From positions 186,001 to 250,000 of the IMG/VR virus record IMGVR_UViG_3300028654_000001: 64,000 bases of DNA. One strand, 5' to 3'. The notes below the pieces were generated by a model, which had not been told where the DNA came from, did no database searches, and saw only the letters and a list, made by a program, of their open reading frames with translations. A program made the translations under genes and the position numbers. How positions within the stretch are numbered: the first letter of the stretch is position 1; the number at the start of each line of letters is the position of its first letter. Shown here piece after piece: positions 7,911-64,000 of the stretch.

Positions 7911-8645
7911 ATGTCTTCAGATCTCGAACTAGTAGAGCGAGTCAAGCGACGCTTCTTGGCTCATCAAGATCGCGCTAGTCGACGTCTAATTCCATTCGAT
8001 ATACTCAAAGTAAGCGAGTTAGCCAGAGAGATTACAGAAGAAGCTCTTGACTACTTGGAGCATCGTATCGACCCTGGTTCAACTCTAGGTTCAAGTGTAC
8101 GACCTAATGCCATTTGTGCATCTAAAATCATCAACCTGAAGACTGTCAAAGGGGATGACGTTGACTTCCTAGTTCAGGTTAGAGTTGGAAAGACCGCTCA
8201 TGGCGATAAAGCTACTCACGGGTACTATGATCATAGAGACAACACCATCGTAATTTACCTATCACCTTGGTTGAACTCAGACGATCTAAATGAGACTCGT
8301 AAGTACGATATTGTGAATGAGAACAAGAGTGTACTCATTCATGAAGTGACCCATGCCCTCGATGTCATTGACAACTACAAAAAGGAAGAGGGCACTGCTT
8401 ATTACAACAACCCTCATGAGATACGAGCATTCACCAGACAGATTGTTGATGAAGCTAGTAGGGTGTTGAAGGGTCTTCGCCTCACCTCACGAGCACTGAA
8501 GAGGCCTATGCCTCAAGGGTCTAAACTAGTAGAAGCGCTACTTGATGGATCAAAGACGTGGCGTGAGATTAAGAATAACTTGAACGACGCTAGCAACAAG
8601 TACATTCGTCAAGTGCTCGTCAATGAACTAGACCTCGTGGTGTAA
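7911..8645 (+). CDS. zincin-like metallopeptidase with N-terminal RVxxRF motif
   Basis: LIHEVTHALD (HExxH) and downstream YYNNPHEIRA. Confidence 0.7.
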   Translation: MSSDLELVERVKRRFLAHQDRASRRLIPFDILKVSELAREITEEALDYLEHRIDPGSTLGSSVRPNAICASKIINLKTVKGDDVDFLVQVRVGKTAHGDKATHGYYDHRDNTIVIYLSPWLNSDDLNETRKYDIVNENKSVLIHEVTHALDVIDNYKKEEGTAYYNNPHEIRAFTRQIVDEASRVLKGLRLTSRALKRPMPQGSKLVEALLDGSKTWREIKNNLNDASNKYIRQVLVNELDLVV

Positions 8646-8653
8646 CCATAAGG

Positions 8654-9286
8654 ATGACGAGATACGGTGACTGGTCTCAGACCCTGACGGGTCGTCGATT
8701 CTATGTGTTTGACCCTCACCCGGATGACATCTTCATTGAGGACATTGCAGGATCAAGCTCTAAGATATGTCGTTTTAACGGTCACTCAACAGTTTTCTAC
8801 TCTGTGGCTCAGCATTGCGTTGTTGGTAGTTATATTATCGAAGAACGAACCAAGAACTTGCTGCTAGCCTTTGGGTTCTTGCTCCATGACTCAGGGGAGC
8901 CTTACGTTGGAGACATGACCCGACCTCTGAAGCTGATGCCAGAGATGGAAGCTTACCGGAATGCCGAACACAATATCAACCAAGTCCTAGCAAAGAAGTT
9001 CAAGGTTGATCTAACAGATCCTATCATCAAAGAAGTAGATGATGAGATGCTTGCCACTGAGCGAAAATACTTCATGGTTCCACTTGAAGGGTGGCACCTA
9101 AGGCGAGAACCACTGGACATCAAACTCAAACCGTGGACTTGGCAGAAATCTCAACGAGAGTACCTCAATCGATACTACGAGCTGTGTCTCCGATTGGATG
9201 GGTTCCCCAAGGTGGCCACCACCATTCTCAAGCACACTAAGTTGCTTAAGCTGTCAAACATAGCCTTCTCGTCAAGGAGTGGTTGA
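8654..9286 (+). CDS. HD-domain 5'-deoxynucleotidase (YfbR/YfdR-like)
   Basis: CRFNGH, YSVAQH, LLHDSGEPYVGD, D..MLATE motifs. Confidence 0.88.
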   Translation: MTRYGDWSQTLTGRRFYVFDPHPDDIFIEDIAGSSSKICRFNGHSTVFYSVAQHCVVGSYIIEERTKNLLLAFGFLLHDSGEPYVGDMTRPLKLMPEMEAYRNAEHNINQVLAKKFKVDLTDPIIKEVDDEMLATERKYFMVPLEGWHLRREPLDIKLKPWTWQKSQREYLNRYYELCLRLDGFPKVATTILKHTKLLKLSNIAFSSRSG

Positions 9287-9516
9287 TGTCAAAAGCTTCT
9301 CGTAACAAGAAAGTTGCGTCTGTAAAGACGGTAGGCACTAACGATGTGGGGCTGAAGAAGATTAGTCAGATTGAGTTCCCACAGGCGTGGTTGGAAGCTC
9401 GAGACCGTGATCCTAGTCTACCAGAGACACCCCCGGATGGGATACCAGAGGAGGCCAAGCGGGTCATAACCATTCTTGTTCGCCAAGTGCTCAAACTGGA
9501 ATACGAATGGTCATAG
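9283..9516 (+). CDS. hypothetical protein
   Basis: Start overlaps the stop of the HD gene. Confidence 0.55.
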   Translation: MMSKASRNKKVASVKTVGTNDVGLKKISQIEFPQAWLEARDRDPSLPETPPDGIPEEAKRVITILVRQVLKLEYEWS

Positions 9517-9858
9517 GGGGCTCTTGAGAACTCTCATAATCAAGGATTCAAGGTCTTTGATATGGAACGGCTTTTCTAGTATGAATGGAAAACCCTTTTT
9601 CCCTGCCCAACCTGTTGTCAGAATAAATAGGTTCGTCAACTCAGGGTGATTCGTCTTGATCCAATCATAGAGGGAATCTGCATTCCCATCTGGCAGGCTG
9701 TAATCAGAGATAACTAAGTCGAAAGACTCCGTACTCAGCACTGTCTTAGTTTCAAGCAAGGAGCCAGTACTTCGCACTTCAAAACCATCCGCAGATAGGA
9801 TGGTTGTGAATAACCTCCGAACAACCGGCTCATCTTCGACTAAAAGTATGCGGGTCAC
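9511..9858 (-). CDS. single-domain response regulator (REC/CheY-like)
   Basis: ILLVEDE, DLVISD (phospho-Asp), LPDG, TG and KPF motifs. Confidence 0.9.
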   Translation of the reverse strand: MTRILLVEDEPVVRRLFTTILSADGFEVRSTGSLLETKTVLSTESFDLVISDYSLPDGNADSLYDWIKTNHPELTNLFILTTGWAGKKGFPFILEKPFHIKDLESLIMRVLKSPL

Positions 9859-9944
9859 TCTCTCATATTTTAGAAGTTGTTTAAGGTGGTTAATGTTACA
9901 CTAGGCCACCAATTCATCAGTGTATTCATAACGGTAGGTTAATC

Positions 9945-10064
9945 GTGGAAGTTCCTGAGAAAGTAGTTTCAATTTGCAGAAGACTCGTACGAGCTGGCCA
10001 TCAAGGTTGGCTTGTAGGGGGTGCAGTGCGTGACTCCATCATGGGGGGGCCAAATCTACGATAG
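9945..10064 (+). pseudogene. 5' remnant of a second CCA-adding enzyme gene
   Basis: Translates VEVPEKVVSICRRLVRAGHQGWLVGGAVRDSIMGG then stops; parallels MKVPEKVHLICSTLKQAGFEAWVVGGAVRDSLLG at 11441. Confidence 0.8.
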
Positions 10065-10399
10065 ATGACCCCTCATTGCCAACTTGATGATTTCAATGAG
10101 AGCGTCAATATGAAATGGCTTGGCCAAAAAGTAAGGAAATCCCTCGACCTCGGGCCACCCTGAGATTACAATGAACCTTTCCTTCATTGCCGGGTACTTA
10201 CCCAGAATCCACTTGTACAGGTCATCAGCAGATCCAGATCCAAGCCTCAAGTCTGAGACAACTAAGTCAATCAGCTCGTTATCTAGGAGTAGCTTGGCTT
10301 CGTCGAGGGTCGAAGCCGCCTCGACGATGTAGCCCGAAGAAAGGTGCAGAACATCTTTCTCAAAATGGGCTTGTCTTCCACCAATAGAACGTGTTTCAT
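10056..10399 (-). pseudogene. second REC-domain gene, frameshifted near 10336-10343
   Basis: MKHVLLVEDKPILRKMFCTFL continues in another frame as SGYIVEAASTLDEAK..DLVVSD..KPF; paralogous to 9511..9858. Confidence 0.8.
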
Positions 10400-10428
10400 A
10401 CTCTTTACTTCAGAGAAAATAGTTATGT

Positions 10429-11403
10429 CTAGGTAGTATCGGTTTGGTAAGACCACTGAAATCCCTTATATACCCTACCACTTTTACATAGTGACCTTAG
10501 GGTCATACCTGAGATACCGCATTTAGTGGTGGCTTCTTTGGAGCTTGAATACAACTCCATAGTATCAAGCCCAACTTTCTGAATCCTACGAACTCTGAAC
10601 TTGGCCATCGGGTAGTGAGCATGAGCATGTCTATTGTTTTCACTCTGAGTCGCCCACTCCAAGTTATCAGCCCTATTGTCTATTTTGTTGAGGTTCTGGT
10701 GGTTCACCGTTAGGTCAAGAGAGGTGAATCCTTCAGGAAGTGGTAAGAATGCTAATGCCACAAGACGATGGACTGAAACCTTGGACCCTGCTAGATCTAC
10801 AGTTAGATATGGGTCACCACTACCGTAGGTTACCCTACCGCCTTTCAATCGGACTCGACCTAGGGATGATACCTCAACAGTTTTGTCATTGAATTGTGTG
10901 TTAGCCCACCTCTCACCGGGTAGCTCTTTAGTAGCGTATGCCCACTTAACTCCATACGCTCCTCGAATCCTACCTTGACACGCTAGCCAGATACGGGAGT
11001 AATCATGCGGGATTGACCTTATTGAGGGCCACTCTTTGATAACCTGACCATTCTGATCAAGCTGTAGGACAGCCCTGGAACTAGTTTTTGATCCTGTTGA
11101 GCGGGCAAGCCTTCTGTGATCTCCAGTAGTTGCCCATTCAAGATTTCCTACTCGATTGTCCTTTGTATTCTGGTTCTTGTGGTGGACGATCATATCCTTT
11201 ATCGGAGAATTCCCTAGAAAAGTAAGTGCAACGAGCCTATGTACATGAATCGTGGTTTTCTTTCCGCCTACTGATAGTACAACACTATGGTACCTACCTG
11301 ATTTAGATCCTCTTAGCACATAACTGTCCGGGTTCCGTACTTGACCAGAATCCGATATCTCATACTTTTGAAAGGGTTCTGGTGCGCTTAGCCACTTTTC
11401 CAT
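10429..11403 (-). CDS. NUMOD4/HNH homing endonuclease with two HNH modules
   Basis: YEISDSGQVR, VHRLVALTF..HHKNQNTKDNRVGNLEW and a second VHRLVALAF..NHQNLNKIDNRADNLEW. Confidence 0.9.
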   Translation of the reverse strand: MEKWLSAPEPFQKYEISDSGQVRNPDSYVLRGSKSGRYHSVVLSVGGKKTTIHVHRLVALTFLGNSPIKDMIVHHKNQNTKDNRVGNLEWATTGDHRRLARSTGSKTSSRAVLQLDQNGQVIKEWPSIRSIPHDYSRIWLACQGRIRGAYGVKWAYATKELPGERWANTQFNDKTVEVSSLGRVRLKGGRVTYGSGDPYLTVDLAGSKVSVHRLVALAFLPLPEGFTSLDLTVNHQNLNKIDNRADNLEWATQSENNRHAHAHYPMAKFRVRRIQKVGLDTMELYSSSKEATTKCGISGMTLRSLCKSGRVYKGFQWSYQTDTT

Positions 11404-12804: not shown

Positions 12805-13557
12805 ATGCTAATTCTCGGAATAATGGCGATTATACTGGTACTAACCATCTGTGTATCCACCGTTGTTTATTTTCTTGGTAAATACCACAAGGCAAAGGAT
12901 GAGGCTGAGAAACAGAGGTTGAGAGCGGTATCCGCTGAGAATTCTGCTCGAGTGGCTGCTGGACAACGACCGATACCTGGGAGTGGGGTTGATGCTAGTG
13001 AATTAGCAGCTAGGTATAGAACACCTTCCCCACCTGAACCCCCTCCAAACAGAACTGAGTCAGGAAGAGTTTCAACCCGACCAAGGACACGGCCAAGATC
13101 TCGTCAAAGTATGGAGTCCTCTTTCACTGATCTATTCAGTAGCATGAGTGAGCAGATGACCCAAGTCTTTACTGGGGTGTCTCAAGCAGTGAGCGTGGTT
13201 AGTGAGCAAGCTACCCTCTCTGTAGCCATAGCTCGGGATGCTCAATCCCTATTGAATCTTGGGTTTGTTCAAGAAAATATTCAACTTGATCAAAGTCGGA
13301 GGTCTAACTTACAACACCTGAGTCTCATTCCTGGAGTATCCTCTCGAACGGTCACTGCACTACAGAGGCTTGAAACTTCGAATCGTATAGCTGAGCACCT
13401 TAACTGGGGGCGACTAGTAATCCAATTCATGCGTATGATTGACTCTGGTGGGATAACCTTCGAGAACGAGAACAAGGCTCCTGAACCAACTACTGCTAAG
13501 GAACCAGAGCCCGAGAAGCTACCTCCAACAAGGTTTGAGCGCGAGGATGTGATATGA
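12805..13557 (+). CDS. membrane-anchored hypothetical protein with C-terminal TRFER tag
   Basis: N-terminal TM helix; ends EKLPPTRFEREDVI; shares a domain (..NR..WG..MR..SG..) with the next gene. Confidence 0.8.
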   Translation: MLILGIMAIILVLTICVSTVVYFLGKYHKAKDEAEKQRLRAVSAENSARVAAGQRPIPGSGVDASELAARYRTPSPPEPPPNRTESGRVSTRPRTRPRSRQSMESSFTDLFSSMSEQMTQVFTGVSQAVSVVSEQATLSVAIARDAQSLLNLGFVQENIQLDQSRRSNLQHLSLIPGVSSRTVTALQRLETSNRIAEHLNWGRLVIQFMRMIDSGGITFENENKAPEPTTAKEPEPEKLPPTRFEREDVI

Positions 13558-14603
13558 GACCATTGTTTGATGGATGGGCCTTGCTCGCCTTCCTGTTCTG
13601 GATGGGTTTCTGCTGGCTCCTCTGCGTACGAAGATTGTTCTGGGGTTCCTTGGTAAGGAACTTCATCACAAGTGTCTTCTTTGCAATCTCTGGTATTGCA
13701 CTCCTCTTCCTAGCAACTAGGCCTTGGATTAACACGGCCCACATCCCTCATGGAGTCAACTTTCCGCCCCCGAAGTACAATAGTGAGATCCTAAATCTTG
13801 TAGGATCAATGTGCCTGACTCTATCCCTCGCCATCAGGGTAGTAATTCAACCGATCCCTACGCCATGCCCAAGAGTCTTGGTTTCGGATGAGAACATATC
13901 TCACCTTAGAGGTACTTGGCACATCATTGATGAGGTCAGGGTTCGAGTGGGGGACATCGTAATCCTTATAAATCAGAATCGAGCTGTAGATAACGGAGCT
14001 TGGGAAGTCAGAAAGCCACCCTGGCGCAGACCTCAATCAAATCAGAAGGGCTACCATTCCTTTGGTTCTTGGTTCATTGCTAATTGTGGTAACAAGTATG
14101 CTCATACTCTATGGGTGGGATCATTATGCCGCAATGACATCATCGGTGAGGGTGAACTCGAGTGGAAGCAACTCGATCTAAACAGCAGAATACGAACTTT
14201 CGTGAGCCTCGAGATACCCTGCAGTATTGGTGAGACCGCCAAGTTCCTTCTTCGAGTAGGAGTACTTCCATACCAGATTCGATGCAATCTCCAAGAAGAA
14301 GCAGTTAGGGACCTTTTGCAAGCAGGACACATATCACCAACCTCAGTAGGTATCCTACTGCACAAGCCTGACCCTAATCGGAACTCTACTGAGTGGGGTC
14401 CTCGAGTCAAAGCGGTGATGAGGTTGCTCATTCACTCGGGTGAGTTTGAATACCCCAAGGAAGCCTACGAGAGTGCAGTAACTAATGGGTTCGAGCACCG
14501 TATGACTGAGACTGAGGTGAGGGCTGACTTCGAGGTTCGAGTTAGGAACGAAACCCCAGAACCTCGAACCCCGACTAGGTTCGAAAGAGATGAAGTGATA
14601 TGA
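13554..14603 (+). CDS. multi-TM protein with tail-fibre-like domain and TRFER tag
   Basis: Three hydrophobic segments; VGDIVILINQNRAVDNGAW; ends PTRFERDEVI. Confidence 0.75.
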   Translation: MRPLFDGWALLAFLFWMGFCWLLCVRRLFWGSLVRNFITSVFFAISGIALLFLATRPWINTAHIPHGVNFPPPKYNSEILNLVGSMCLTLSLAIRVVIQPIPTPCPRVLVSDENISHLRGTWHIIDEVRVRVGDIVILINQNRAVDNGAWEVRKPPWRRPQSNQKGYHSFGSWFIANCGNKYAHTLWVGSLCRNDIIGEGELEWKQLDLNSRIRTFVSLEIPCSIGETAKFLLRVGVLPYQIRCNLQEEAVRDLLQAGHISPTSVGILLHKPDPNRNSTEWGPRVKAVMRLLIHSGEFEYPKEAYESAVTNGFEHRMTETEVRADFEVRVRNETPEPRTPTRFERDEVI

Positions 14604-15425: not shown

Positions 15426-15428
15426 GTT

Positions 15429-17539: not shown

Positions 17540-18058
17540 TCATCTGTGTTGAGACTTCATTAGCTTGACGGTAGCATTGAAGGCTACCAACCAAAACTTG
17601 CTTTTACCAGCCCTCTTGGACTTCACAAGTTGAGATTTGTTGAGCTCTACTGGACTCAAGTCAAGAGCTTCTCGTATGCCATCCACTGTAGCATCAAATT
17701 CGGCTAAGCTTTCCGGAGTAGCTTCGTCGCTGACGGTATACTGTTGAAGGGTTGCCGTTGTCTCCAGGTCACCAATAGTTATGAATGTCTTTAGCTTACC
17801 CCCAATTCGATCTGTGGTGATATTAGCCTGACCTCGATAGTCCCCTGTTGCCTTCTTCTCGTCATCTGTACTATGGAGTTGATACTTCAGAGGCGGTACG
17901 TCGAAGTTCAGCTTTGAGAGATCGTACGCAGAGGATAGGTAATCAAAGTCCTCAGACAGCTTAAACTTCATCAACAGCCCATTCTCAATCACAATTCTTT
18001 GAAGTGAAGAGGCGGCGGTAAACCTACGAACGACGCGGGCTATGATTTCGAGATCCAT
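17540..18058 (-). CDS. hypothetical protein with N-terminal RVxxRF motif
   Basis: MDLEIIARVVRRFTAA. Confidence 0.7.
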   Translation of the reverse strand: MDLEIIARVVRRFTAASSLQRIVIENGLLMKFKLSEDFDYLSSAYDLSKLNFDVPPLKYQLHSTDDEKKATGDYRGQANITTDRIGGKLKTFITIGDLETTATLQQYTVSDEATPESLAEFDATVDGIREALDLSPVELNKSQLVKSKRAGKSKFWLVAFNATVKLMKSQHR

Positions 18059-18547: not shown

Positions 18548-18925
18548 ATGAAGCCGGGTGAGGTAATCGCAGAAGGTCTACTCGGCTTCTATGCCTGTGC
18601 TGTCCTCAACGATCTCGAGAAGATGGTGGTCTTACCCTCTGTTGTACTCGAGTCCGTCAAGGACAACTCAGGGGTAACCCCCGAATGGCCCCTTGGGGTC
18701 TATGTCCTGTTCACTGAGGATGGGGTCCTTCTTGGAATACACGGTAAGAACAAAGAGGGGGAGATACTCGACAGGTATAGTTTCTTTGACCTCGACGAGG
18801 ACACAATCCCGGATCTTGGTGAAGATATCTGGAACCTGTGGAAGGTCCTTCGTGAGGCCTCTGATGAGTTGGTCGAGGCCAACTATCAGGCTTTACTGAA
18901 GCAGACTCTGGAGTCTGAAAATTGA
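18548..18925 (+). CDS. hypothetical acidic protein
   Basis: Start set at 18548: GGTGTA 18532-18537 lies 10 nt upstream. Confidence 0.7.
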   Translation: MKPGEVIAEGLLGFYACAVLNDLEKMVVLPSVVLESVKDNSGVTPEWPLGVYVLFTEDGVLLGIHGKNKEGEILDRYSFFDLDEDTIPDLGEDIWNLWKVLREASDELVEANYQALLKQTLESEN

Positions 18926-19392
18926 TGCTTACAGTAGCTGACGTCATACCGACTGCAGAGGTTGGACAGTATTGGGTACATACCTTTCCCCTGTACATGT
19001 TTCGAGTTATAGCCGTTGATGTACAACAGTGGCAGTTCACCCTTGTCACTTGGATTGTCGGAGGGGTCCCTGAAGAGGATAGTTACTATATCGGGTATGA
19101 TACTTTTAAGGGATGCCGTAGACTTCACAACTCTGTAGTAATTGATCCCCATGCACTTAGCCTCAAGGAGATCCCTCGAACTGGAGACATTTTAGTTTTC
19201 CCAAGTGGGGAGTTGGTTTTCGTGGTTACCGATGGATCCCTAGTAACCCTGTACCATGATGGGGTTGTACCCAAAGACCCAGCTGTACTTTCCAAGCTTA
19301 AGCTATTTCAACGTGGCCCAGTCGACCCGAACCTAAAACCCACAACCAGATTCGAACGAGTGTTAGGTGATCATGCCCTTGACCCAGACTGA
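18922..19392 (+). CDS. hypothetical protein with TRFER tag
   Basis: Ends KPTTRFERVLGDHALDPD; paralogous to the next gene. Confidence 0.75.
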   Translation: MMLTVADVIPTAEVGQYWVHTFPLYMFRVIAVDVQQWQFTLVTWIVGGVPEEDSYYIGYDTFKGCRRLHNSVVIDPHALSLKEIPRTGDILVFPSGELVFVVTDGSLVTLYHDGVVPKDPAVLSKLKLFQRGPVDPNLKPTTRFERVLGDHALDPD

Positions 19393-19840
19393 TATATTCC
19401 CGGTGATGCAACCCGATCAGTGGTGGGCTCAAACCAGAACCCTTGGATTAGTACATATCTTGGCCATAGATCAACAGGTTGGCCCAGAGAGATGCTTTGA
19501 AATGGAGGTTTGGGCACCTGATGAACTACCTGGGAATAAGTGGCATTGGAATCGGGGACTTGGGCCTCCAAATGAATCACTCCTCTGGTTCAGGTCCAAG
19601 GTGGATGTCAAGCATCCAATTGAAAAGTATAGGATTGGAACGGTCTACATTTCAGCGGTGAACCACCAGCTATTCTTCTTAGCTATCATCCACGGAGAGG
19701 TTTGGATACTCGCCGATTGGGAGGTTACGGACACAGATCTTCAGAAGTCCTATGTGTTTCAACCAGCCCAGAAGGATCCAACTGAGTTGCATGACACTAG
19801 GTTGGAAAGGGTTCTGAACGAGGAGCACTCACCGACTTGA
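19367..19840 (+). CDS. hypothetical protein with TRLER tag
   Basis: LTQTDIFP..DQWW..LAID resembles the previous gene; ends DTRLERVLNEEHSPT. Confidence 0.75.
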   Translation: MIMPLTQTDIFPVMQPDQWWAQTRTLGLVHILAIDQQVGPERCFEMEVWAPDELPGNKWHWNRGLGPPNESLLWFRSKVDVKHPIEKYRIGTVYISAVNHQLFFLAIIHGEVWILADWEVTDTDLQKSYVFQPAQKDPTELHDTRLERVLNEEHSPT

Positions 19841-20082
19841 CACCTGTAGTTATAAGTGGTACTGCCACCTACATGGATATACCCCAAAGAGGCGTTCACC
19901 ACCTTCTCCACACGCTGTGGACAAAAGCCGTAGGTACTGAGAATTACAACAAGAATGAGTGGAAGCAGCTGGCTGCTTACCTGTATGCTCTTATGGCCGA
20001 CCCTATGGCTTCCCAGAATATCATTGAAGTCGACAGGATACTTCAACCACCGACGCGGTTCGAGCGGGAGCCGGTGATCTAA
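19837..20082 (+). CDS. small protein with TRFER tag
   Basis: LHTLWTKAVG..Y.K.EW core; ends PPTRFEREPVI. Confidence 0.7.
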   Translation: MTPVVISGTATYMDIPQRGVHHLLHTLWTKAVGTENYNKNEWKQLAAYLYALMADPMASQNIIEVDRILQPPTRFEREPVI

Positions 20083-21705: not shown

Positions 21706-22710
21706 GTGAAGTGCTGTGAAGGAGCTAATTACATGACTAAAGATCCCTCTGATAAGGATCCATCGTTTGGCAGTGAGGCCGCCAGGGTTGCTTCAAGCTA
21801 TCTAGTTCAAAGGGTAGCCCCTGAAATCTGTAAAGGATTTGTAGACCACCTGCTTAAACACGGTGAGTTGGATGTTACGACTCACAATAATAAGGCGGCC
21901 AGGAGTAGGGCCAGGAACAACTACATTCGCTGGGCTCATTGGATGGAGCTAGCAATGTTCTCTCAAGTGGTACCCAATGAGACCGCTTCAGATAAAAGCT
22001 CTGAGCTTGTGAAGAATTCGGTTCCGACTGACCCTATTGAAGCTGAGATCCACAGGGAGAAACATTCTAGATCCGATACTAAGCTCAAAGTAGTAAGCTC
22101 CACTCCCCCACCACCTAAAGAAACCGAGCAAAGTTACGATAATGACCCCTCTTTAGGTTTAGAGATTGATAAGTCGAACCAAGCTCTAATCAATCAGCGT
22201 AACTTCTTGACGGAACTCTGCAAAGAAGCTTCCTCTCTTTTGGATTCCCTTATCGAGGATAGTGGTAAGTTGGGGATCTCTGAACTCAGATACCCCCCAA
22301 TAATCATCACACACAGCGGTCTACGAGCTGTCTTGGTCCGATCCATCACTGTGGTAAAAAATGGAACGGTATACAAGTGTGACTACAAAACAGGGGGTAA
22401 TGCAATCACCCGTCACAACTCTGATATGATCGTACTGAGAGACAACAAGAAACTCATTAGGTCTAATCAAAAACAGCCAGGGTATATCGAAGGTAGAAAC
22501 GAACAATTTGTCAAGGGGATGGAGTACAAGAATGGGGCTGTCTACAGTGGCTACTTGATGGCTGATGGAAAGGAACAGTTCAAGTATGCTGTTCACTATC
22601 AGCTTCAAGACGGTGAAGTTGTACAGGTAGATGCCAAGCGGTGTCGAGAGGTGGAAGACCTTCTTTCCACTGGACAAGACCCAGCTCTGTCATTTAAGAA
22701 GGCCAGTTAG
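21706..22710 (+). CDS. hypothetical protein
   Basis: 334-aa ORF; AAGGAG precedes the likely start at 21733. Confidence 0.8.
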   Translation: MKCCEGANYMTKDPSDKDPSFGSEAARVASSYLVQRVAPEICKGFVDHLLKHGELDVTTHNNKAARSRARNNYIRWAHWMELAMFSQVVPNETASDKSSELVKNSVPTDPIEAEIHREKHSRSDTKLKVVSSTPPPPKETEQSYDNDPSLGLEIDKSNQALINQRNFLTELCKEASSLLDSLIEDSGKLGISELRYPPIIITHSGLRAVLVRSITVVKNGTVYKCDYKTGGNAITRHNSDMIVLRDNKKLIRSNQKQPGYIEGRNEQFVKGMEYKNGAVYSGYLMADGKEQFKYAVHYQLQDGEVVQVDAKRCREVEDLLSTGQDPALSFKKAS

Positions 22711-32668: not shown

Positions 32669-33076
32669 GTGGCTTCCCCTCTTTTCAACTCTCAGAATCG
32701 CCCTCGGGCGGCTTCCCACTTAGCCGAGATTGACTTCGGCCGACTGGAAAAGTCTCGTAAAGAGAGCGGGAACGTCATCATAACCTACGAGACTTGCCCG
32801 GGTATTTTCCTACTGGCCTATGAGCAGGTTCATAATAGGAGCATCACATTTGCTCCGTTCCCAGTACCGAAGTACTGGGAACGACATGTGACCAGGGTTC
32901 ACTTACTGGTACCCGCTCCAGGCTCAATCAATCTCAAGAATGGGTCCCAAGTTACAACTATACCGGAGGATAGTGTAGCCCATGTTCTAGGGGCCATCCA
33001 GTATGTGCTAGAACAAGGTGGGTTCCAGGTAGTACTAGGTGCTCCAACTCGATTTGAACGAGCCGACGTGATTTAG
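32669..33076 (+). CDS. hypothetical protein with TRFER tag
   Basis: Ends APTRFERADVI; GGTGTA 10 nt upstream. Confidence 0.75.
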   Translation: MASPLFNSQNRPRAASHLAEIDFGRLEKSRKESGNVIITYETCPGIFLLAYEQVHNRSITFAPFPVPKYWERHVTRVHLLVPAPGSINLKNGSQVTTIPEDSVAHVLGAIQYVLEQGGFQVVLGAPTRFERADVI

Positions 33077-34847: not shown

Positions 34848-35597
34848 ATGCCAGCTGGAGCCTTTTGGCGCCTTCAGTACAGAGATGGCCTAGATCACAG
34901 AATTCAAGCTCGGGCTGATAGGCAAAGGTTTGCCCAAGACAGGAACGTCCTCACAGCCATTACTCGCTACCACGAGGGCGCTTTCGTTCTGGAGGTTCAG
35001 CTTGTCGATGATGCGGAGTCTACCTTCGATGGGAGTCTTCACGAGCTCTACAATCGACAGCAGTCCATTCGAAACCCACCGCCAGTGACTAGGACCATCT
35101 CCTCCTTAGCTAGATGGGGAAACACACCTGATTCAAATGGGATGGTCATAGATCCCCAAGTCAGGGAGAACATCATCAGTCAGTACATCCAAAGCTCAGG
35201 GGGTCGTCAACGATTGGCCCAGGCGATGGTAGCCCCTCTCCGAACACGACTAGACTACTCGGGGATGGCAAGACGGGTATTCATGGTTGAACCTCTCCAA
35301 GGAGGGGCCTTGCCCACCTACGACAAGGACATGGTCAGTGACTTCAACCCGCCCGACTGGGTCGACGCTGGCACGTGGGTCAAGAGTGACGATAAATACG
35401 CGATTATTGTGGCCACCGAGCCGAAGAATACCGAAAGCCTACCCTTCAACTCGGCTATAGTTGAATACCAGGTCTGGAGGGATTACGGGCCTCCAAAGAG
35501 GCTTGACGCGGAAACCTTCTGTAAGTACTGGTTACCATCCGAGACTCCAGCAGAGCCTAGAACCCGATTCGAACGAATTCTGATGGACGATGATTGA
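34848..35597 (+). CDS. mosaic protein: capsid-like segment + PxW domain + TRFER tag
   Basis: IISQYI..GRQRLAQAMVAPLR.RLDY...RRVFMVEPL..GALPTYDKD; ends PRTRFERILMDDD. Confidence 0.75.
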   Translation: MPAGAFWRLQYRDGLDHRIQARADRQRFAQDRNVLTAITRYHEGAFVLEVQLVDDAESTFDGSLHELYNRQQSIRNPPPVTRTISSLARWGNTPDSNGMVIDPQVRENIISQYIQSSGGRQRLAQAMVAPLRTRLDYSGMARRVFMVEPLQGGALPTYDKDMVSDFNPPDWVDAGTWVKSDDKYAIIVATEPKNTESLPFNSAIVEYQVWRDYGPPKRLDAETFCKYWLPSETPAEPRTRFERILMDDD

Positions 35598-35931: not shown

Positions 35932-36297
35932 ATGATGAGGGTTCTGATCATTGATTCATACGCCAAGGAAGAAGCAGACAAGGTAGTCAAGTTTGCGTTC
36001 CGCCCAGAGAATCTTTACCGTCCAGGGACTACCGCCAGGATCCCAGGAAATGTGAGGAAGCATATCCTTGTACTCGGGGACTACAAGATAGTCTTCTCGT
36101 TGACACGAGATCCTCAAACTGGTGAGGTTTTCAGACACCTCTCAATGTCGGTTCCAACTCTAGGGGCCTTCCCACACCCTGCAGCGATAACCGAGGTCAT
36201 CGACCTATTTGGATTCAAGGGGGGTTTGTGTAACTGTCAACTCGATGCAAATAGAGTTGATAATTGCATCACAGTAGCTCAGAACCTCGAATCTTAG
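35932..36297 (+). CDS. hypothetical protein
   Basis: VFS..RHLSMSVP..PHP pattern. Confidence 0.75.
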   Translation: MMRVLIIDSYAKEEADKVVKFAFRPENLYRPGTTARIPGNVRKHILVLGDYKIVFSLTRDPQTGEVFRHLSMSVPTLGAFPHPAAITEVIDLFGFKGGLCNCQLDANRVDNCITVAQNLES

Positions 36298-36680
36298 ATC
36301 ACATCCTCCCTCTCAAATCGAGTTGGAGGGAGTTTTTCTTCTACCACCTTCTCTCTTTTGCGACTTAGGACCTGTGGCTTTGGGGCTGGACGCCACTTAT
36401 CTAGGACATCTTTTAACCAACGAGAGATGGCTGACTTCGGGTTACCTTCACGTTCGAAGTGGATGTAGTTGTTCCCACCTGAAACTACCCGTATACCTGT
36501 TATTACGAACACAGGCATATCATAGGGTGTAGGGTTTTCGGGCAGGTTACGACAAACCCAATCAGGTCCTTCAGGGAATAGTGAGGTAATCTTGGATGGT
36601 GGAAGTGGGATTATCTTACTCCCCACTGCAACCCAACTATCATCCTTTGGAGCTTTCCAGGGGTCTTTGATCCGAGGCAT
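36294..36680 (-). CDS. PxW-domain protein with TRFER tag
   Basis: Ends EKLPPTRFEREDVI. Confidence 0.75.
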   Translation of the reverse strand: MPRIKDPWKAPKDDSWVAVGSKIIPLPPSKITSLFPEGPDWVCRNLPENPTPYDMPVFVITGIRVVSGGNNYIHFEREGNPKSAISRWLKDVLDKWRPAPKPQVLSRKREKVVEEKLPPTRFEREDVI

Positions 36681-36718
36681 TAGTTACCACTACACCGGTG
36701 TAAGTGGTAACTAATGCC
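36676..36718. promoter_or_regulatory. palindromic divergent promoter region (two back-to-back GGTGTA motifs)
   Basis: ggcattagttaccactacacc|ggtgtaagtggtaactaatgcc; perfect inverted repeat except one extra A. Confidence 0.7.
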
Positions 36719-37754
36719 AACGTGGAGGATTGAGTACCCTAGCCTACTTGCAAACGATAGAACACAGCTATACGCCGAGTGGGCTCTCATCCGAAACGAT
36801 CCTATGCTGACAAACTGTGAGACTACAGAAAGTCAGGACAACCCAATAACGATACTTACAGCCTCTTTCCTTGGGTTTGGCCCTGAGAACCCCGCGGTCT
36901 CAGAGATTATCCGAAGGCGAGGGATCCTACAACTTCCTGTCAACATCCAGATGCCGCTTATAGTATCCCGTCTGGCATCCAACAGTGAAGGTAGGTATGA
37001 GGTCGTTAGGGATGACCAACCCAGGTTCGGTGATGGCAGGCATTCGAGACCAGACAGGTTGCGAGGACACACCATTAACGCGATCATGTTTGATGTTGAG
37101 GCTTCGTTCAATAGTGGGATCCCACTACATCCTGGGGATCTTGTCGGAGTGGATCCCGCTACTGGATTAGTTATCCGTGAGGGTTTGTCCTTACTCTCGA
37201 CTCCTCCCGTTGGGATTGTAGCTGGGGTTGATATCGCAGTTGGTAGTGATCGATCTGAGATTACCCTGGCTCGGAGAAGGTTCCCAGAAGATGCTGATAG
37301 AGCTTTCAGGCAAGAGTTCATGGGGGAATTCCCAGAAGAAGGCTCCCCGGTTAGAACTGAGCTGACAGTCCTCGCTGCGGATCCCCCAAGAGCCCCCATT
37401 GGGTTCACGGTGCATGAGCGGATTGGAATGGCAGTCATCAACCCACGTACAATCGAACGGATTCAGGCAACTAGGGTTAACGTACCCCTATTCGAACTTG
37501 AGAATAACCCACAAATCAACCTGAGTGACATACGAGAACGAAGACTTGACCTGATCGAGCGTTCGGTGCACTCGATCCAAGAACAAGAGGATCGGGAGAT
37601 CTTGGCCGCACTCGAGGGTACCTTCACGAACCAGCCGAGGCCTCCAGTGACCCCGACCCCAGTGGTGGCACCTGAACCTGTGGAGGAGAACTTCATCCGT
37701 AGAACCCGCTTCGAGCGTATCCTTGATGATACAGATGAACTGTACCCACTCTAA
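36714..37754 (+). CDS. mosaic protein with terminase-like and capsid-like fragments + TRFER tag
   Basis: LRGHTINAIMFD, GVDIAVGSDRS, FRQEFMGEF, RTELTVL, PLFELENNPQI..I.ERR.DLIER; ends RTRFERILDDTDELYPL. Confidence 0.75.
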   Translation: MPTWRIEYPSLLANDRTQLYAEWALIRNDPMLTNCETTESQDNPITILTASFLGFGPENPAVSEIIRRRGILQLPVNIQMPLIVSRLASNSEGRYEVVRDDQPRFGDGRHSRPDRLRGHTINAIMFDVEASFNSGIPLHPGDLVGVDPATGLVIREGLSLLSTPPVGIVAGVDIAVGSDRSEITLARRRFPEDADRAFRQEFMGEFPEEGSPVRTELTVLAADPPRAPIGFTVHERIGMAVINPRTIERIQATRVNVPLFELENNPQINLSDIRERRLDLIERSVHSIQEQEDREILAALEGTFTNQPRPPVTPTPVVAPEPVEENFIRRTRFERILDDTDELYPL

Positions 37755-41142: not shown

Positions 41143-41718
41143 GTGGGTTGTTCACTCCTCTTTAGAAGAGCAATACTAGTTGAGGTAGCCCCTTGGTTAC
41201 ACAGTAGTTGCCAGCTTGTGGTTGCTTATGGCGGTGGTCAAATCACTGTCCATAGGTATGACCCCTACAGCATGATTGAAGAGGATTCCAGGATAGTAGG
41301 GAGATCTATCAACCTCCCTATTCGTCACTACTACTACGTTGACACTACAGAACAGGGGTACTACTTCTATGTTGACATTCAGGGTAACATACTCGAGTTC
41401 GATAACTCAACGTTTTTTGACTTAGCTCGAATGAGCAATGACCCAAGTCTAGGGTATGGTCACGAACCGATAATAGGAGTCCTTAGATCAAACCCTGTTA
41501 GGCCAACGAGGTTCGAGCGAATCCTTAGAGAGAATGAAATCTGGGAAGATTACCGCCCCACCCCAAAGCCAATCCAAGAAACCAGGAAAACTGAAGTCAC
41601 TGAAGCTGATCTAGCAGCTATCTTCAACAAGCCCCAAAAGTTGATTGCAGATGCTCCTAAACCCATGGACATTGATATCCTCAAGTGCATGGAAGAGGTA
41701 TTAGGTAAGACCTCTTAG
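41143..41718 (+). CDS. hypothetical protein with internal TRFER tag
   Basis: PVRPTRFERILRE. Confidence 0.7.
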   Translation: MGCSLLFRRAILVEVAPWLHSSCQLVVAYGGGQITVHRYDPYSMIEEDSRIVGRSINLPIRHYYYVDTTEQGYYFYVDIQGNILEFDNSTFFDLARMSNDPSLGYGHEPIIGVLRSNPVRPTRFERILRENEIWEDYRPTPKPIQETRKTEVTEADLAAIFNKPQKLIADAPKPMDIDILKCMEEVLGKTS

Positions 41719-45084: not shown

Positions 45085-45306
45085 TTGAGGCACATGAGCT
45101 CAGAAAGTATCATAAGTTTCCGCGCAGTTAGACGAATAGCTAAGCTTTGGGGAGTCCCCCCTTACCGCGTGGATGTCAGAGTTGACCTGGCCAACTGTAG
45201 ATTGATGGCCACTCTCGATGGAAACCCTCCAGATCAAGAAAAGATATCTATATTAGAAAATGACGTCCTTGAATCCACTAGACAAATGAGAAAGTCGATG
45301 AACTAA
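45085..45306 (+). CDS. hypothetical protein
   Basis: Coupled to the next gene (TAATG). Confidence 0.6.
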   Translation: MRHMSSESIISFRAVRRIAKLWGVPPYRVDVRVDLANCRLMATLDGNPPDQEKISILENDVLESTRQMRKSMN

Positions 45307-45566
45307 TGCCCACGAAACCCTCTAAGGCTTTTCGAGTAGAAACCCGAGTTGACACGTTCGATGCCTCTTACCAGACATTTCGAGTCAAGTTAGGTATCCG
45401 TAATGCAGCAATAGAAGCCCTCCGAGAAGCCGTAGGCCCTACTACGATAACACCAGTGCTCGGTGGGTTCGAGATAGTTTGCAGAGGGGTATTAGAGATG
45501 TCGGACGATAATGAAAACTCTTTCCTGGAAGCTGCGCGTAGAGTAGCCTCCAAGTTTAGAAGGTGA
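45306..45566 (+). CDS. hypothetical protein
   Basis: Coupled to coaD; ends RRVASKFRR. Confidence 0.6.
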   Translation: MPTKPSKAFRVETRVDTFDASYQTFRVKLGIRNAAIEALREAVGPTTITPVLGGFEIVCRGVLEMSDDNENSFLEAARRVASKFRR

Positions 45567-61468: not shown

Positions 61469-62236
61469 TCCTTCAACCATCTTGTCGACCCGAGCCCAAA
61501 GATCGGTGAGGGTCGAGTTGTTGTCCAATACCCAATCGAAGTCATCGTCATGTAGGGAAAGTAAATCATTCTCACTCTTGTGATCTGGGGATACTTTGAT
61601 CTCTTTGACCTTCCGCTTCACACGGACAAGCTTTCCACCAGCTTTGCGAACGGCCTCAGCTTCATTCTGATATCGTAGGTCGGTGAGTACCACGTCTGTA
61701 CGAGGTACTCCAATGAGGACCGGGCCTCCCTTGATCCCAGAGCAATGAAAGTTTGGGTTACTTGAGTGACGGGCTTCAGCAAGTTGGTAGAGTCCCAGCT
61801 TCTGGTCGTACCCAAACTTGCCGGTAGCCAGCCTGTTGGTCATACGGATAGCGTACTCCGCCCAGATAGGCTCGTAGCACTCATTGCGCCCCCACCCGTC
61901 ACCCAAGGTTTGGAGAGCGTGCCTGACCGTCAAGCAAACTTGAGTATGGTCCTCAGCGGAATGAACTAAGGGACTTCCTCCGAAGATAGTTCTGGGGTAC
62001 CTCGGATCTTCCTTGTTCCGATTCTCACTCGGACCCCACAACTGGTCATCAGTGAAATCAAACACATCTTTCAGGATACGCTTAAGGGGATCAGCAAAAG
62101 CAATCGGAACATAGTTGTGGGCTTGAACTAGCTGTCTAGCAGCTTCGTCCTTACCCGCACCGGCGCTACCTCTCTTACGGGAGAGCCCATTGAACCAACC
62201 AGCCTCAGTGGTGAGACCCGAGATAGCTATCAACAT
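61454..62236 (-). CDS. deoxynucleoside monophosphate kinase
   Basis: GAGKD, FADPLK, R..LQ.LG..WGR, DLRY.NE, H.SE. Confidence 0.88.
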   Translation of the reverse strand: MLIAISGLTTEAGWFNGLSRKRGSAGAGKDEAARQLVQAHNYVPIAFADPLKRILKDVFDFTDDQLWGPSENRNKEDPRYPRTIFGGSPLVHSAEDHTQVCLTVRHALQTLGDGWGRNECYEPIWAEYAIRMTNRLATGKFGYDQKLGLYQLAEARHSSNPNFHCSGIKGGPVLIGVPRTDVVLTDLRYQNEAEAVRKAGGKLVRVKRKVKEIKVSPDHKSENDLLSLHDDDFDWVLDNNSTLTDLWARVDKMVEGLKSL

Positions 62237-62245
62237 GTACTCGGA

Positions 62246-63493
62246 CTACACCGAGTAAGGGACGAGGCCTTCGTCTGAGTTCAATATAGACCAAAGGATC
62301 ATTCCTAGTGTAGACCAATCTACACTAGTCTTATCTATAGACGAGGAATCATTGACCAAGTCCCTAAGCTTGATTACCTCAACGTAGGTTTTCTCTGTGT
62401 CAACCTCTATACCGAAAGTCTCTCCGGATTGAGCTATTCCCATAAGGTGGTCTCGCTCAGCCTTAGTGATCCTCCCGTAGAACAACGTGCTTGTGTGAGC
62501 TGATAGAGTACCTGCCAGCTGCAAGGTACCCAGCTCCTTGAGTCGAGCTGGGTCTATGGTGAAAGAGGTTTCCTCGTGGAGCTCTTCGAGGGCCACTTTC
62601 TTGGTCTCCCCTTTATCTTCCTTGGCGCTCCCACCTGGTAGCTCAATAATATACCCTGTATTAGTCCTAGCCGGGCTTCTAAACTCTTTTACCAAGAGAA
62701 CCTCAGTATCCCACAGATGCTTGAGACCCTCTTCCTCAGGACGGTAGAGAAGCGCTACAGATGAGACGTCTGAACGTCCGAACACGAACTCATTTTTCTT
62801 GGCCCTTTGTTCGGCTGCAATCCAAACATTGACATGAAGGCACCAGCAAAAGACTTTGTCCATCTGCTGTCCCACCCGGAATGTCCAAAGGACTCGAGCA
62901 CTGTCCAGGCGGTTGCCAGCGGCCGTCTGGGACTTATACCACCTCTGGAAGGTGGTGTCCTTCCAGACGAGCAAGGGTACCTGAGCTTCGCCGCCGACTC
63001 GTAGGGAACCCTCTCCCAGGCTCTTGACGGCATCCTCGAGGGTGGTGTCCAGTGTCGAGTAGTTGGCCACCTTCAACTTGGTAGCCATGTGCTGAATGTA
63101 TTGAACCTTCTGAGCATCAGGTGGGGTACCAAGAATCACCTTCCCTGTGTCTGCCCAGACTCCGAATTCGACATTGGTTGTAAGACCTGGGAGAGTATTC
63201 AGATCTCGAGGAATCCAGAAAACAATCACATCAGCCATATTCAGTGCGGAGGTTTCCCACTCAACCTGGTCGACGTAATCTCCGAACACTTTTCCATCAC
63301 GAGGTTCCGGAACAAATACGTGACCATCGAACCCAAGCTTCTCAAGTAGTTCGAGGGCTTCGGGTCTCCAACTCTTGGTTTCCTTATCCCTAGGTGTAGG
63401 CCCCGCCAAAAACAGACTCTTCACAACCTCTGTGGGAAGATCCTCTTTAGCATAGACCACCTTCATGCCCGACTTCCATGTCTCTGGATTCAT
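62246..63493 (-). CDS. nucleoside deoxyribosyltransferase-like domain fused to a Nudix hydrolase
   Basis: LFLAGPTPR..SWR..WE..ADVIVFW..TTNVEFG; EFRSP..ELPGGS..ALEELHEET. Confidence 0.8.
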   Translation of the reverse strand: MNPETWKSGMKVVYAKEDLPTEVVKSLFLAGPTPRDKETKSWRPEALELLEKLGFDGHVFVPEPRDGKVFGDYVDQVEWETSALNMADVIVFWIPRDLNTLPGLTTNVEFGVWADTGKVILGTPPDAQKVQYIQHMATKLKVANYSTLDTTLEDAVKSLGEGSLRVGGEAQVPLLVWKDTTFQRWYKSQTAAGNRLDSARVLWTFRVGQQMDKVFCWCLHVNVWIAAEQRAKKNEFVFGRSDVSSVALLYRPEEEGLKHLWDTEVLLVKEFRSPARTNTGYIIELPGGSAKEDKGETKKVALEELHEETSFTIDPARLKELGTLQLAGTLSAHTSTLFYGRITKAERDHLMGIAQSGETFGIEVDTEKTYVEVIKLRDLVNDSSSIDKTSVDWSTLGMILWSILNSDEGLVPYSV

Positions 63494-63557
63494 GGTCCAG
63501 AATTACACCGGAAGTTGGGTACCTAGTTTACTAAACCCCTTATCGGAGTGTTCAAGC

Positions 63558-64000
63558 ATGGCATCGGACCTCCACCTAATCCAACGGGTAGCATCAAAGT
63601 GGTCGAGTAAGGATTTTGAGTCAAGGTATGCCCGCCTTCTGCTTTCGATGTCAAGGGATCAAGCCAAAAAGGTCCTTGGTTTCCCTCCAAATGCTAACCC
63701 ATCAGAAAGTGAAATTACCAAGAACTATAGGGAGTTGGCTCTTAGGAACCACCCTGATCGTGGTGGTGATCTTGACACAATGGTGGAGATCAATGTTGCC
63801 AAGGATGTGCTGACCGGAAAGGCTCAGGAACGTTGGCAACCAGAGCCGAGCCCAGAGCGTACTAAATACAAGCCACCCCCACGTCCAGAGGCAGCCTACA
63901 CAGTGAAAGGGGTTCCATTTGCCGCCGCTTGGTCTGGAGCAGGGGTCCCAAGTGGCACTGATTGGAAGTTCGTCAGTGAGCAAGTTAGCTTGTACAGTAA
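63558..64000 (+). CDS. J-domain protein (3'-truncated by the window edge; absent from the ORF track)
   Basis: MASDLHLIQRVASKW..AKKVLGF..EITKNYRELALRNHPDRGGD..M.EIN.A.D.L; frame open to the end. Confidence 0.85.
   Translation, partial: MASDLHLIQRVASKWSSKDFESRYARLLLSMSRDQAKKVLGFPPNANPSESEITKNYRELALRNHPDRGGDLDTMVEINVAKDVLTGKAQERWQPEPSPERTKYKPPPRPEAAYTVKGVPFAAAWSGAGVPSGTDWKFVSEQVSLYS

What the first reader, a model, noticed from the sequence alone, without database searches (positions are those of the whole stretch)
7911..63602. Second peptide signal: N-terminal DL-x-h-h-x-RV-x-x-[RK]-[FW]
Three unrelated proteins begin alike: MSSDLELVERVKRRFLA (zincin, 7911), MDLEIIARVVRRFTAA (18058, minus strand) and MASDLHLIQRVASKWSS (J-domain, 63558). 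Weaker RVAS matches occur in 21706..22710 and at the end of 45306..45566. Two of the three have the CTTAT-class leader and none has TRFER. Inference: a capsid-targeting or prohead-processing leader analogous to the T4 internal-protein targeting sequence, i.e. a second address label.
Basis: partly seen in the sequence, partly recalled or inferred. Interest (0 to 1): 0.6.

Follow-up and report, generated by a model that had tools for sequence, protein, structure and literature searches.

The report
Shared N-terminal address helix, megaphage proteins
About thirty otherwise unrelated proteins of a 512-kb soil megaphage begin with the same 16-residue helix, which looks like a sorting or docking label, most likely for loading enzymes into the phage head; the destination is not yet shown.

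Summary
The three N-termini are real and far from chance. The window lies in a complete 512,571-bp phage genome. A profile built from the motif finds 31 copies in 30 of about 675 called proteins; shuffled proteomes give none at that score. Copies sit a median of 10 codons after the preceding in-frame stop.

The consensus is D/E-h-x-h-I-x-R-V-A/V-x-R-F/Y-x-x-A. Conservation has alpha-helical periodicity and ends after 16 residues. All Arg and Val codons are used, so selection acts on the peptide.

The protein bodies are mostly unrelated: five HExxH zincins, a J-domain protein, a topoisomerase IB, a DRAT-like ADP-ribosyltransferase. The leader is portable, because an orthologue and a paralogue lack it. 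Related megaphages keep it.

The destination is not shown. Head targeting is my best guess (0.4): two carriers lie in the head module, the cargo looks like effectors, and carriers avoid the promoter-like class of the replication genes. The main rival (0.25) is a tether to a phage ClpX whose gene sits inside the densest carrier cluster in four genomes. The leader core resembles the SspB peptide that binds the ClpX N-domain.

The two weaker RVAS matches are not members. No cleavage site was found.

The parts
7911..8645 (+). Carrier 1: 244-aa zincin-like protein (HExxH at aa 144). The leader is aa 4-19, window 7920-7967.
   Evidence: Translation. Weak Pfam Zincin_1 hit. Profile score 29.1. The orthologue in relative G001 keeps the leader.
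7890..7896 (+). CTTATAG element, 21 nt upstream of the start of carrier 1.
   Evidence: This class is enriched among carriers: 7/30 against 31/645, p = 8e-4.
17540..18058 (-). Carrier 2: 172-aa protein with no known family. The leader is aa 2-17, window 18008-18055.
   Evidence: Translation. Profile score 35.6, the top hit. No Pfam, PHROG or Atlas lead. No CTTAT upstream.
63558..64000 (+). Carrier 3: 435-aa J-domain protein that runs past the window end to genome 250865. The leader is aa 4-19, window 63567-63614.
   Evidence: Pfam DnaJ, 1.2e-7. The start is confirmed by an upstream stop in relatives. The leader is kept in G001, G002, G003 and G004.
63539..63543 (+). CTTAT element, 19 nt upstream of the J-domain start.
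   Evidence: It is conserved in G001 and G003.
45306..45566 (+). Not a carrier. This 86-aa protein is a paralogue of carrier 470130-470420 and lacks the N-terminal leader. Its C-terminal A-R-R-V-A-S-K-F belongs to the family body.
   Evidence: BLASTP 51% identity over 69 aa, E = 1e-25. The C-terminal profile score is not above shuffles.
21706..22710 (+). Not a carrier. The RVAS strings here are chance.
   Evidence: Best profile score at that site is -4.4.

Best explanation
The element is a portable address or docking peptide of about 16 residues. It forms an amphipathic alpha-helix at, or within a few residues of, the N-terminus. About two thirds of its surface is conserved (positions 1, 2, 4, 5, 7, 8, 9, 11, 12, 15). 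One stripe is variable and presumably faces solvent (positions 3, 6, 10, 13, 16-17). About 25-30 otherwise unrelated proteins of this megaphage carry it, so that each can bind one common partner.

The destination I think most likely is the assembling head. On this reading the helix docks on an internal procapsid component: scaffold, capsid-protein interior, portal, or the conserved 130-aa head-module protein that carries the most canonical copy. The attached enzymes are then enclosed and later delivered with the DNA, as with the T4 capsid-targeting sequence and the P1 DarB signal.

Shown: the motif, its enrichment, its N-terminal position, peptide-level selection, helical periodicity, modularity, and conservation in the clade.

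Inferred: that it binds a common partner, and that the partner is in the prohead.
For: Reality and portability:
- 31 copies against none in shuffled proteomes.
- N-terminal position holds without any start-codon choice.
- All six Arg codons and all four Val codons are used at the invariant positions.
- Information content peaks at 100 degrees per residue and falls to background after column 16.
- AF2 puts a helix at residues 2-16 of the 130-aa family (low confidence).
- Only three pairs of carrier bodies show any similarity.
- The G004 orthologue of 169406 lacks exactly the 13 leader residues; the rest is 54% identical.
- Window protein 45306-45566 is a leaderless paralogue of a carrier.
- Orthologues in G001, G002, G004, G005 and G006 keep the motif positions while the x positions change.
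- In a sample of 33 of 363 homologues of the 130-aa protein, R, V, A, R and A are nearly invariant.

Head destination:
- Two carriers lie in the head module, which runs portal, topoisomerase IB carrier, large terminase, 213-aa ORF, 130-aa carrier.
- The cargo looks like effectors. Five of the genome's eleven HExxH proteins are carriers (p = 5e-5). So are a DRAT-like ADP-ribosyltransferase, a topoisomerase IB and a J-domain protein.
- No carrier has the GGTGTA upstream element that precedes clpX and the replication genes: 0/30 against 93/645, p = 0.025.
- Carriers are enriched for the CTTAT element, which also precedes three of the four tail-fibre N-domain genes.

Precedents: T4 CTS and SPN3US propeptides (PMC5694885); the N-terminal 30 residues of P1 DarB (PMC9024508).
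Against: - There is no virion proteome and no cultured relative with the leader. Phage G and Tunturi_5 lack it.
- No conserved protease site follows the leader. All T4 CTS peptides end in one.
- PHROGs gives no virion annotation for any carrier.
- Six carrier genes surround a ClpX gene rather than head genes.
- A few copies are internal or C-terminal.
- 'Late' timing of the CTTAT class rests on only three tail-fibre-like genes.
Confidence: 0.4

Rival explanations
1. The leader is a tether, or part of a degron, for the phage-encoded ClpX unfoldase. It binds the zinc-binding N-domain of ClpX, as the SspB XB peptide does. Carriers would then be recruited to ClpX for unfolding, remodelling or timed degradation with host ClpP, or would act as adaptors.
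For: - Genome 277071-279446 (-) encodes a ClpX. It has the C4 zinc finger, an AAA_2 domain, a GYVG pore loop and an M-G-F version of the ClpP-docking loop. An intein splits its Walker A motif.
- It sits inside the densest carrier cluster, with five carrier genes on one side and one on the other.
- The linkage recurs in G004, G005 and G006. In G006 six leader copies lie within about 6 kb of clpX, including the J-domain and a zincin orthologue that lie about 20 kb away in this genome.
- ClpX is present in G004, G005, G006, G008 and G010. It is absent from the complete G007, which also lacks the 130-aa protein and all but one or two leader-like N-termini.
- The SspB XB peptide that binds the ClpX N-domain ends in A-L-R-V-V-K (PMC3983244, PMC8808172). 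The leader core is h-(L/A)-R-V-(V/A)-x-(R/K).
- Such tethers work at either terminus, which fits the rare C-terminal and internal copies.
Against: - The resemblance covers five residues and came from recall, so it carries a multiple-comparison risk.
- From memory, XB binds as an extended strand. The leader's nine conserved positions follow helical periodicity.
- clpX belongs to the GGTGTA upstream class and no carrier does.
- Phage G has ClpP and ClpX but no leader.
- G007 has no ClpX yet keeps one good leader-like N-terminus, score 17.8.
- The co-occurrence follows phylogeny and may be simple inheritance.
- The most conserved carriers lie in the head module, not near clpX.
Confidence: 0.25
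2. The leader docks carriers on some other common hub. Candidates are a host factor, a phage-made compartment or membrane, or each other, with the helices bundling into a multi-protein body.
For: The same facts that show a shared docking helix also fit this reading. Two conserved Arg residues plus a hydrophobic face would suit binding to an acidic or nucleic-acid surface. The 130-aa family is predicted to be largely unfolded apart from the helix, as expected of a protein that folds on a partner.
Against: No candidate hub was identified. The motif is too sequence-specific for generic membrane binding. Replication proteins do not carry it, so it is not a general signal for a replication compartment.
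Confidence: 0.25
3. The similarity is not a signal. It would be chance, a nucleotide-level element in the first codons (translation or promoter), or an ordinary homologous N-terminal domain of one paralogous family.
For: Many carriers share an upstream CTTAT-type element, so a linked DNA or RNA signal was conceivable.
Against: - Shuffles give none at this score.
- Synonymous codons at the conserved residues match genomic usage.
- The protein bodies are unrelated.
- Conservation stops sharply after 16 residues.
Confidence: 0.03

Closest known systems
T4 capsid-targeting sequence (CTS) of internal proteins IPI-III and Alt (Mullaney & Black 1996, as summarised in PMC5694885)
   Same: Both are short N-terminal peptides (10-20 residues in T4) shared by several proteins. 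Both are portable. In T4 the tagged proteins include an ADP-ribosyltransferase that is delivered with the DNA.
   Different: The T4 CTS ends in a prohead-protease site and is removed; no such site is seen here. The T4 set is small and partly paralogous. Here about 30 mostly unrelated proteins, about 4% of the proteome, carry the peptide. There is no sequence similarity to the T4 CTS, and head localisation is untested.
P1 DarB N-terminal packaging signal (PMC9024508)
   Same: About 30 N-terminal residues are sufficient to send a protein into the head, the cargo is an anti-defence enzyme, and no cleavage is required.
   Different: In P1 the signal is described for one protein, not for a proteome-wide family.
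SspB XB peptide and other ClpX N-domain tethers (PMC3983244, PMC8808172; Neher 2003 and Park 2007 cited there)
   Same: Both have a core of hydrophobic-R-V-V/A-basic residues and sit at a protein terminus. A ClpX with the zinc-binding domain is encoded next to carrier genes.
   Different: XB has about five informative residues and, from memory, binds as a strand. The leader has nine conserved positions with helical periodicity. Binding was not tested.
Cargo-loading by coat-binding helices: P22 scaffolding C-terminal helix-turn-helix and encapsulin cargo-loading peptides (from my own knowledge)
   Same: A short terminal peptide docks on the inside of an HK97-fold shell during assembly. The peptide is amphipathic and basic in P22. 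It is position-tolerant and transferable to foreign cargo.
   Different: No similarity to the phage's own Q-rich scaffold candidate was found. The one complex prediction, against the capsid protein, gave no answer.
MuF-domain polymorphic toxins of temperate phages (from my own knowledge)
   Same: A constant N-terminal head-association module is joined to variable C-terminal enzymatic 'warheads'.
   Different: MuF is a folded domain of several hundred residues that binds the portal. Here the constant part is a 16-residue helix.

Membership tests
T4-type capsid-targeting sequence | Short peptide at the extreme N-terminus, shared by several proteins | tested here: met
   Median 10 codons after the upstream stop; 25/31 in the first 20% of the frame; alignment A3.
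T4-type capsid-targeting sequence | Ends in a prohead-protease cleavage site and is removed | tested here: not met
   No conserved acidic or other site follows the leader. Information content falls to background at column 17. The specificity of this phage's protease is unknown, so cleavage is not excluded.
T4-type capsid-targeting sequence | Carriers are found inside the head | not testable with these tools
   No virion proteome and no cultured relative with the leader.
T4-type capsid-targeting sequence | Sufficient to target a foreign protein | not testable with these tools
   Natural gain and loss of the leader on homologous bodies shows portability only.
ClpX N-domain tether (XB-like) | Cognate ClpX with the C4 zinc-binding N-domain is present | tested here: met
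   Pfam zf-C4_ClpX 1e-8 and AAA_2 3e-24. The ZBD is conserved in G004, G005 and G006.
ClpX N-domain tether (XB-like) | Peptide core like L-R-V-V-K | tested here: inconclusive
   The leader has (L/A)-R-V-(V/A)-x-(R/K) against the XB sequence in PMC3983244. That is five residues only, and the leader's periodicity is helical.
ClpX N-domain tether (XB-like) | Physically binds the ClpX N-domain | not tested
Twin-arginine (Tat) signal peptide | R-R-x-F-L-K followed by a hydrophobic h-region and a peptidase site | tested here: not met
   Some leaders contain R-R-F, but no hydrophobic stretch follows.
Single paralogous protein family with a homologous N-domain | Similarity extends beyond the motif | tested here: not met
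   All-against-all BLASTP of the bodies finds only three related pairs.

The most novel reading that the evidence does not exclude
This megaphage clade runs a two-label protein-sorting system. One label is the N-terminal helix, on about 30 proteins. The other is the unrelated C-terminal P-T-R-F-E-R tag, on 41 proteins. The N-terminal helix would be the handle by which the phage's own ClpX unfoldase recognises effector enzymes and threads them into the prohead, that is, AAA+-driven protein packaging. A translocase role for ClpX-type chaperones of jumbo phages has been suggested only in general terms (PMC7824862).
Probability: 0.1. Interest if true: 0.9.

Novelty: new variant of a known kind. 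Interest (0 to 1): 0.7.

Why it matters
Head-targeting peptides are known from only a few cases, T4 and P1, and each tags one or a few proteins. A single 16-residue helix on about 4% of a phage proteome would be proteome-scale protein sorting in a virus of bacteria. It is attached to proteases, an ADP-ribosyltransferase, a topoisomerase and a co-chaperone, and it is conserved across a clade of uncultured soil megaphages.

It would give a ready list of candidate injected effectors or ClpX clients for phages that cannot be cultured. It would also give a short natural tag for loading foreign cargo. Both leading readings can be tested directly with peptides and recombinant proteins, without growing the phage.

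Tried and rejected
- Complex prediction of the capsid protein with residues 1-40 of the 130-aa carrier returned 'no answer'. It counts neither for nor against binding. It used the only job, so the ClpX N-domain could not be tried.
- PHROGs, NCBIfam and Atlas searches gave nothing useful for the carriers.
- Megablast of the window against cultured phages found no match.
- The search for related loci with the ADP-ribosyltransferase carrier found no relative.
- tblastn of the 130-aa carrier against cultured phages found no match.
- Profile scans found no leader in Phage G or Tunturi_5.
- No cleavage motif follows the leader.
- Proline plus glycine content after the leader matches controls. Disorder-promoting residues are only slightly raised, 0.56 against 0.51.
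- No leader-like segment was found in the scaffold candidate, protease, portal, terminase or ClpX.
- No ClpP gene was found by PF00574.
- No RNA sequencing run holds this phage.
- A nucleotide-level signal was rejected on codon usage.
- A Tat signal was rejected for lack of a hydrophobic region.
- Two papers on ClpX N-domain specificity were not held. The binding mode of XB and the UmuD tether sequence therefore rest on my memory.
Full report
**Context**

The window is bases 186001-250000 of a 512,571-bp IMG/VR virus record with direct terminal repeats, estimated complete. The standard code fits. No gene caller was available. I therefore called about 675 genes with a codon-usage score and greedy overlap removal. 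Counts that depend on gene calls are approximate, so the main statistics were repeated on raw six-frame translations.

By capsid-protein similarity the phage belongs to a large clade of uncultured huge phages. Its nearest cultured relatives are Tunturiibacter phage Tunturi_5 (48%) and Bacillus phage G (38.5%). Public runs that hold the DNA are rhizosphere and soil metagenomes, and none is RNA.

**1. The observation**

The three N-termini are as described. The J-domain protein starts at window 63558. In relatives G001 and G003 an in-frame stop lies just upstream, and the same ATG and leader are kept.

Relaxing it revealed many more N-terminal copies outside the window.

- An iterated 16-column profile gives 31 hits above 22 bits in 30 proteins. 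Twenty shuffled proteomes never exceed 20.9.
- The profile is trained on its own hits, so I also report three independent measures:
  - A simple pattern not fitted to the hits gives 20 hits against 1.5 expected, 15 of them in the first 15 residues (p = 3e-14).
  - Leave-one-out scores have a median of 21.6.
  - The distance from the preceding in-frame stop has a median of 10 codons, and 25 of 31 copies lie in the first fifth of the frame (p = 7e-13).
- A few of the 31 are weak or internal and may be false, for example the one in 290270-291463. A conservative count is 22-25 carriers.

**2. Anatomy**

The alignment of 27 N-termini (A3) gives M-x(0-8)-D/E-h-x-h-I-x-R-V-A/V-x-R-F/Y/V-x-x-A. Val is invariant. 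The two Arg residues, the aromatic residue and the hydrophobic positions are strongly conserved.

- Information content is high at columns 1, 2, 4, 5, 7, 8, 9, 11, 12 and 15, and low at columns 3, 6, 10, 13 and 16-17.
- Its power spectrum peaks at 100 degrees per residue. This is the signature of an alpha-helix with one exposed stripe and the rest buried.
- After column 16 the information content drops to background.
- AlphaFold2 on the 130-aa family predicts a helix at residues 2-16 and little confident structure elsewhere (mean pLDDT 52).
- The conserved Arg and Val positions use all six Arg codons and all four Val codons at roughly genomic frequencies. Selection therefore acts on the peptide, not on DNA or RNA.

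**3. What carries it**

After the leader is removed, only three pairs of carriers show any similarity. Pfam finds the following:

- zincin-like metallopeptidases;
- a J-domain (1.2e-7);
- a eukaryotic-type topoisomerase I catalytic core (4e-27);
- a DRAT-like ADP-ribosyltransferase domain (1e-10).

Five of the 30 carriers contain HExxH, against 6 of the other 645 proteins (p = 5e-5). Most carriers have no known family.

**4. Portability and conservation**

- The G004 orthologue of carrier 169406-169864 is 54% identical. It begins exactly where the leader ends and lacks 13 residues.
- Window protein 45306-45566 is a paralogue (51% over 69 residues) of carrier 470130-470420, and it lacks the leader.
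- Orthologues in G001, G002, G004, G005 and G006 keep the motif positions while the x positions change.
- The number of N-terminal copies differs among relatives:
  - 24 here under a strict N-terminal criterion;
  - 8 in the complete G004;
  - at least 12 in 180 kb of G006;
  - about 5, degenerate, in the complete G005;
  - 1-2 in the complete and more distant G007.
- The 130-aa carrier next to the large terminase has 363 homologues in public data. In a sample of 33 of them the leader residues R, V, A, R and A are nearly invariant.
- Phage G and Tunturi_5 have no leader.

**5. Surroundings**

The head module lies on the minus strand at 403-422 kb. In the direction of transcription, starting at the 422-kb end, it reads:

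- a 502-aa ORF and a 678-aa ORF;
- the 130-aa carrier;
- a 213-aa ORF, possibly the small terminase;
- the large terminase;
- the topoisomerase IB carrier;
- four small ORFs;
- the portal;
- three ORFs;
- the maturation protease;
- a 479-aa glutamine-rich scaffold candidate;
- a 210-aa ORF;
- a 289-aa HK97-type capsid protein (PHROG major head protein, 3e-52).

The 130-aa carrier and the topoisomerase carrier keep their places beside the terminase in relatives down to about 60% terminase identity.

A second, denser cluster lies at 273-282 kb. It holds five carrier genes, then a gene for ClpX, then another carrier.

- The ClpX has the C4 zinc finger, the AAA+ module, a GYVG pore loop and an M-G-F counterpart of the ClpP-docking loop. 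An intein with a homing endonuclease interrupts its Walker A motif.
- No ClpP is detectable in the genome.
- The linkage between clpX and leader genes recurs in G004, G005 and G006. In G006 six leader copies lie within about 6 kb of clpX, among them the J-domain and a zincin orthologue.

**6. Upstream classes**

Two short elements are over-represented just upstream of start codons.

- GGTGTA lies 12-22 nt upstream of 93 genes, including clpX and several replication genes. No carrier has it (0/30, p = 0.025).
- CTTAT, often CTTATAG, lies 12-30 nt upstream of 38 genes. Seven of 30 carriers have it against 31 of 645 others (p = 8e-4). An earlier count with slightly different start choices gave 8/30.
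- The CTTAT class also precedes three of the four genes that share a tail-fibre N-terminal domain.

I read this as carriers belonging to a regulon different from the replication genes and partly shared with structural genes. The timing labels are inference.

**7. Mechanism**

What is well supported is that the leader is a portable docking helix that lets many unrelated proteins bind one partner. The partner is not identified.

I favour the assembling head (0.4) for four reasons: the head-module carriers; the effector-like cargo, which parallels T4 Alt and the internal proteins and P1 DarB (PMC5694885, PMC9024508); the avoidance of the replication-gene class; and the general precedent of basic amphipathic helices that dock cargo or scaffold on HK97-fold shells (the last from my own knowledge).

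The main rival (0.25) is a tether to the ClpX N-domain.

- The SspB XB peptide that binds that domain ends in A-L-R-V-V-K (PMC3983244, PMC8808172), close to the leader core.
- ClpX N-domain tethers occur at either terminus.
- The gene linkage is conserved across four genomes.

Against the rival:

- The helical, nine-position conservation does not match a five-residue strand motif. The strand binding mode is from memory, because Park 2007 was not held.
- clpX and the carriers lie in different upstream classes.
- Phage G has ClpXP without the leader.
- G007 has a good leader-like N-terminus without ClpX.

The two readings can be joined. A review of jumbo phages has suggested that phage ClpX or BCS1 chaperones might translocate proteins during head assembly (PMC7824862). 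I give that joined reading about 0.1.

**8. What failed**

The only complex-prediction job, capsid protein with the first 40 residues of the 130-aa carrier, returned no answer and is not evidence either way. No cleavage motif, linker signature or scaffold mimicry was found.

**9. Verdict**

The 'address label' idea is supported. The capsid destination is plausible but unproven. 'Prohead processing' is unsupported.

It is a new variant of a known kind, namely terminal targeting peptides of phage proteins. It is unusual in its scale and in the diversity of its cargo.

Noticed in passing
Window examples: 12805-13557 (+), 13554-14603 (+), 18922-19392 (+), 19837-20082 (+), 32669-33076 (+), 34848-35597 (+), 36294-36680 (-), 36714-37754 (+), 41143-41718 (+). 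It lies within the last ~30 residues of 41 mostly small proteins. None of them is a leader carrier. It shows no significant link to the GGTGTA or CTTAT classes.
   Followed up: partly
Genome-wide; window examples lie upstream of 4600, 8654, 22736 and 24807.: (C/T)GGTGTA lies 12-22 nt upstream of the start of 93 genes (6-mer z = 27). It is often in back-to-back palindromic pairs between divergent genes. It precedes clpX and replication genes and is probably a promoter or leader element of one temporal class.
   Followed up: partly
Genome 277071-279446 (-), L008:12074-14446: The phage ClpX has an intein (Hint plus LAGLIDADG) inserted in the Walker A P-loop. G004 has a version of similar length (771 aa aligned, 70% identity), so probably with the intein too. 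No ClpP is found in the genome.
   Followed up: partly
Genome 403571-404440 (-), L010:18574-19440: The HK97-type capsid protein is only 289 aa and is very highly conserved. It is 98%, 96% and 77% identical in G004, G005 and G007, where the large terminase is 78%, 70% and 45%. Two homing-endonuclease genes lie immediately downstream.
   Followed up: no
Genome 403571-404440 (-), residues 171-186 of the capsid protein: An invariant capsid segment, H-D-L-R-V-A-R-I-Y, resembles the leader core L-R-V-A-A-R-F/Y. Its profile score is only 2.6, so this may be coincidence. Mimicry of a capsid contact is conceivable.
   Followed up: no
Genome 405231-406670 (-), protein P0007: A 479-aa protein between the protease and the capsid gene consists largely of Q/E-rich low-complexity repeats. 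It is a likely scaffolding protein and has no family hit.
   Followed up: no
Genome 414860-415906 (-), L011:9863-10906: A eukaryotic/poxvirus-type topoisomerase IB gene sits between the portal and the large terminase. It carries the leader, and its position is conserved in relatives.
   Followed up: partly
Genome 13138, 61132, 164453 and 510316: Four proteins share a long N-terminal domain beginning M-T-T-E-R-F-S-N-Q. It matches tail-fibre PHROGs. Three of the four genes have CTTAT upstream.
   Followed up: partly
Genome 274222-274701 (-) and 273096-274115 (-), compared with G004 283167-283631: In G004 the N-terminal part of one carrier (residues 1-81, ending in its internal leader) abuts the C-terminal domain of the neighbouring carrier. 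This suggests domain shuffling at the leader.
   Followed up: no
Genome 274706-276049 (-): One 447-aa protein has a strong leader copy at its C-terminus (score 30.5, three residues before the stop) and a weaker one at its N-terminus (score 6.8).
   Followed up: partly
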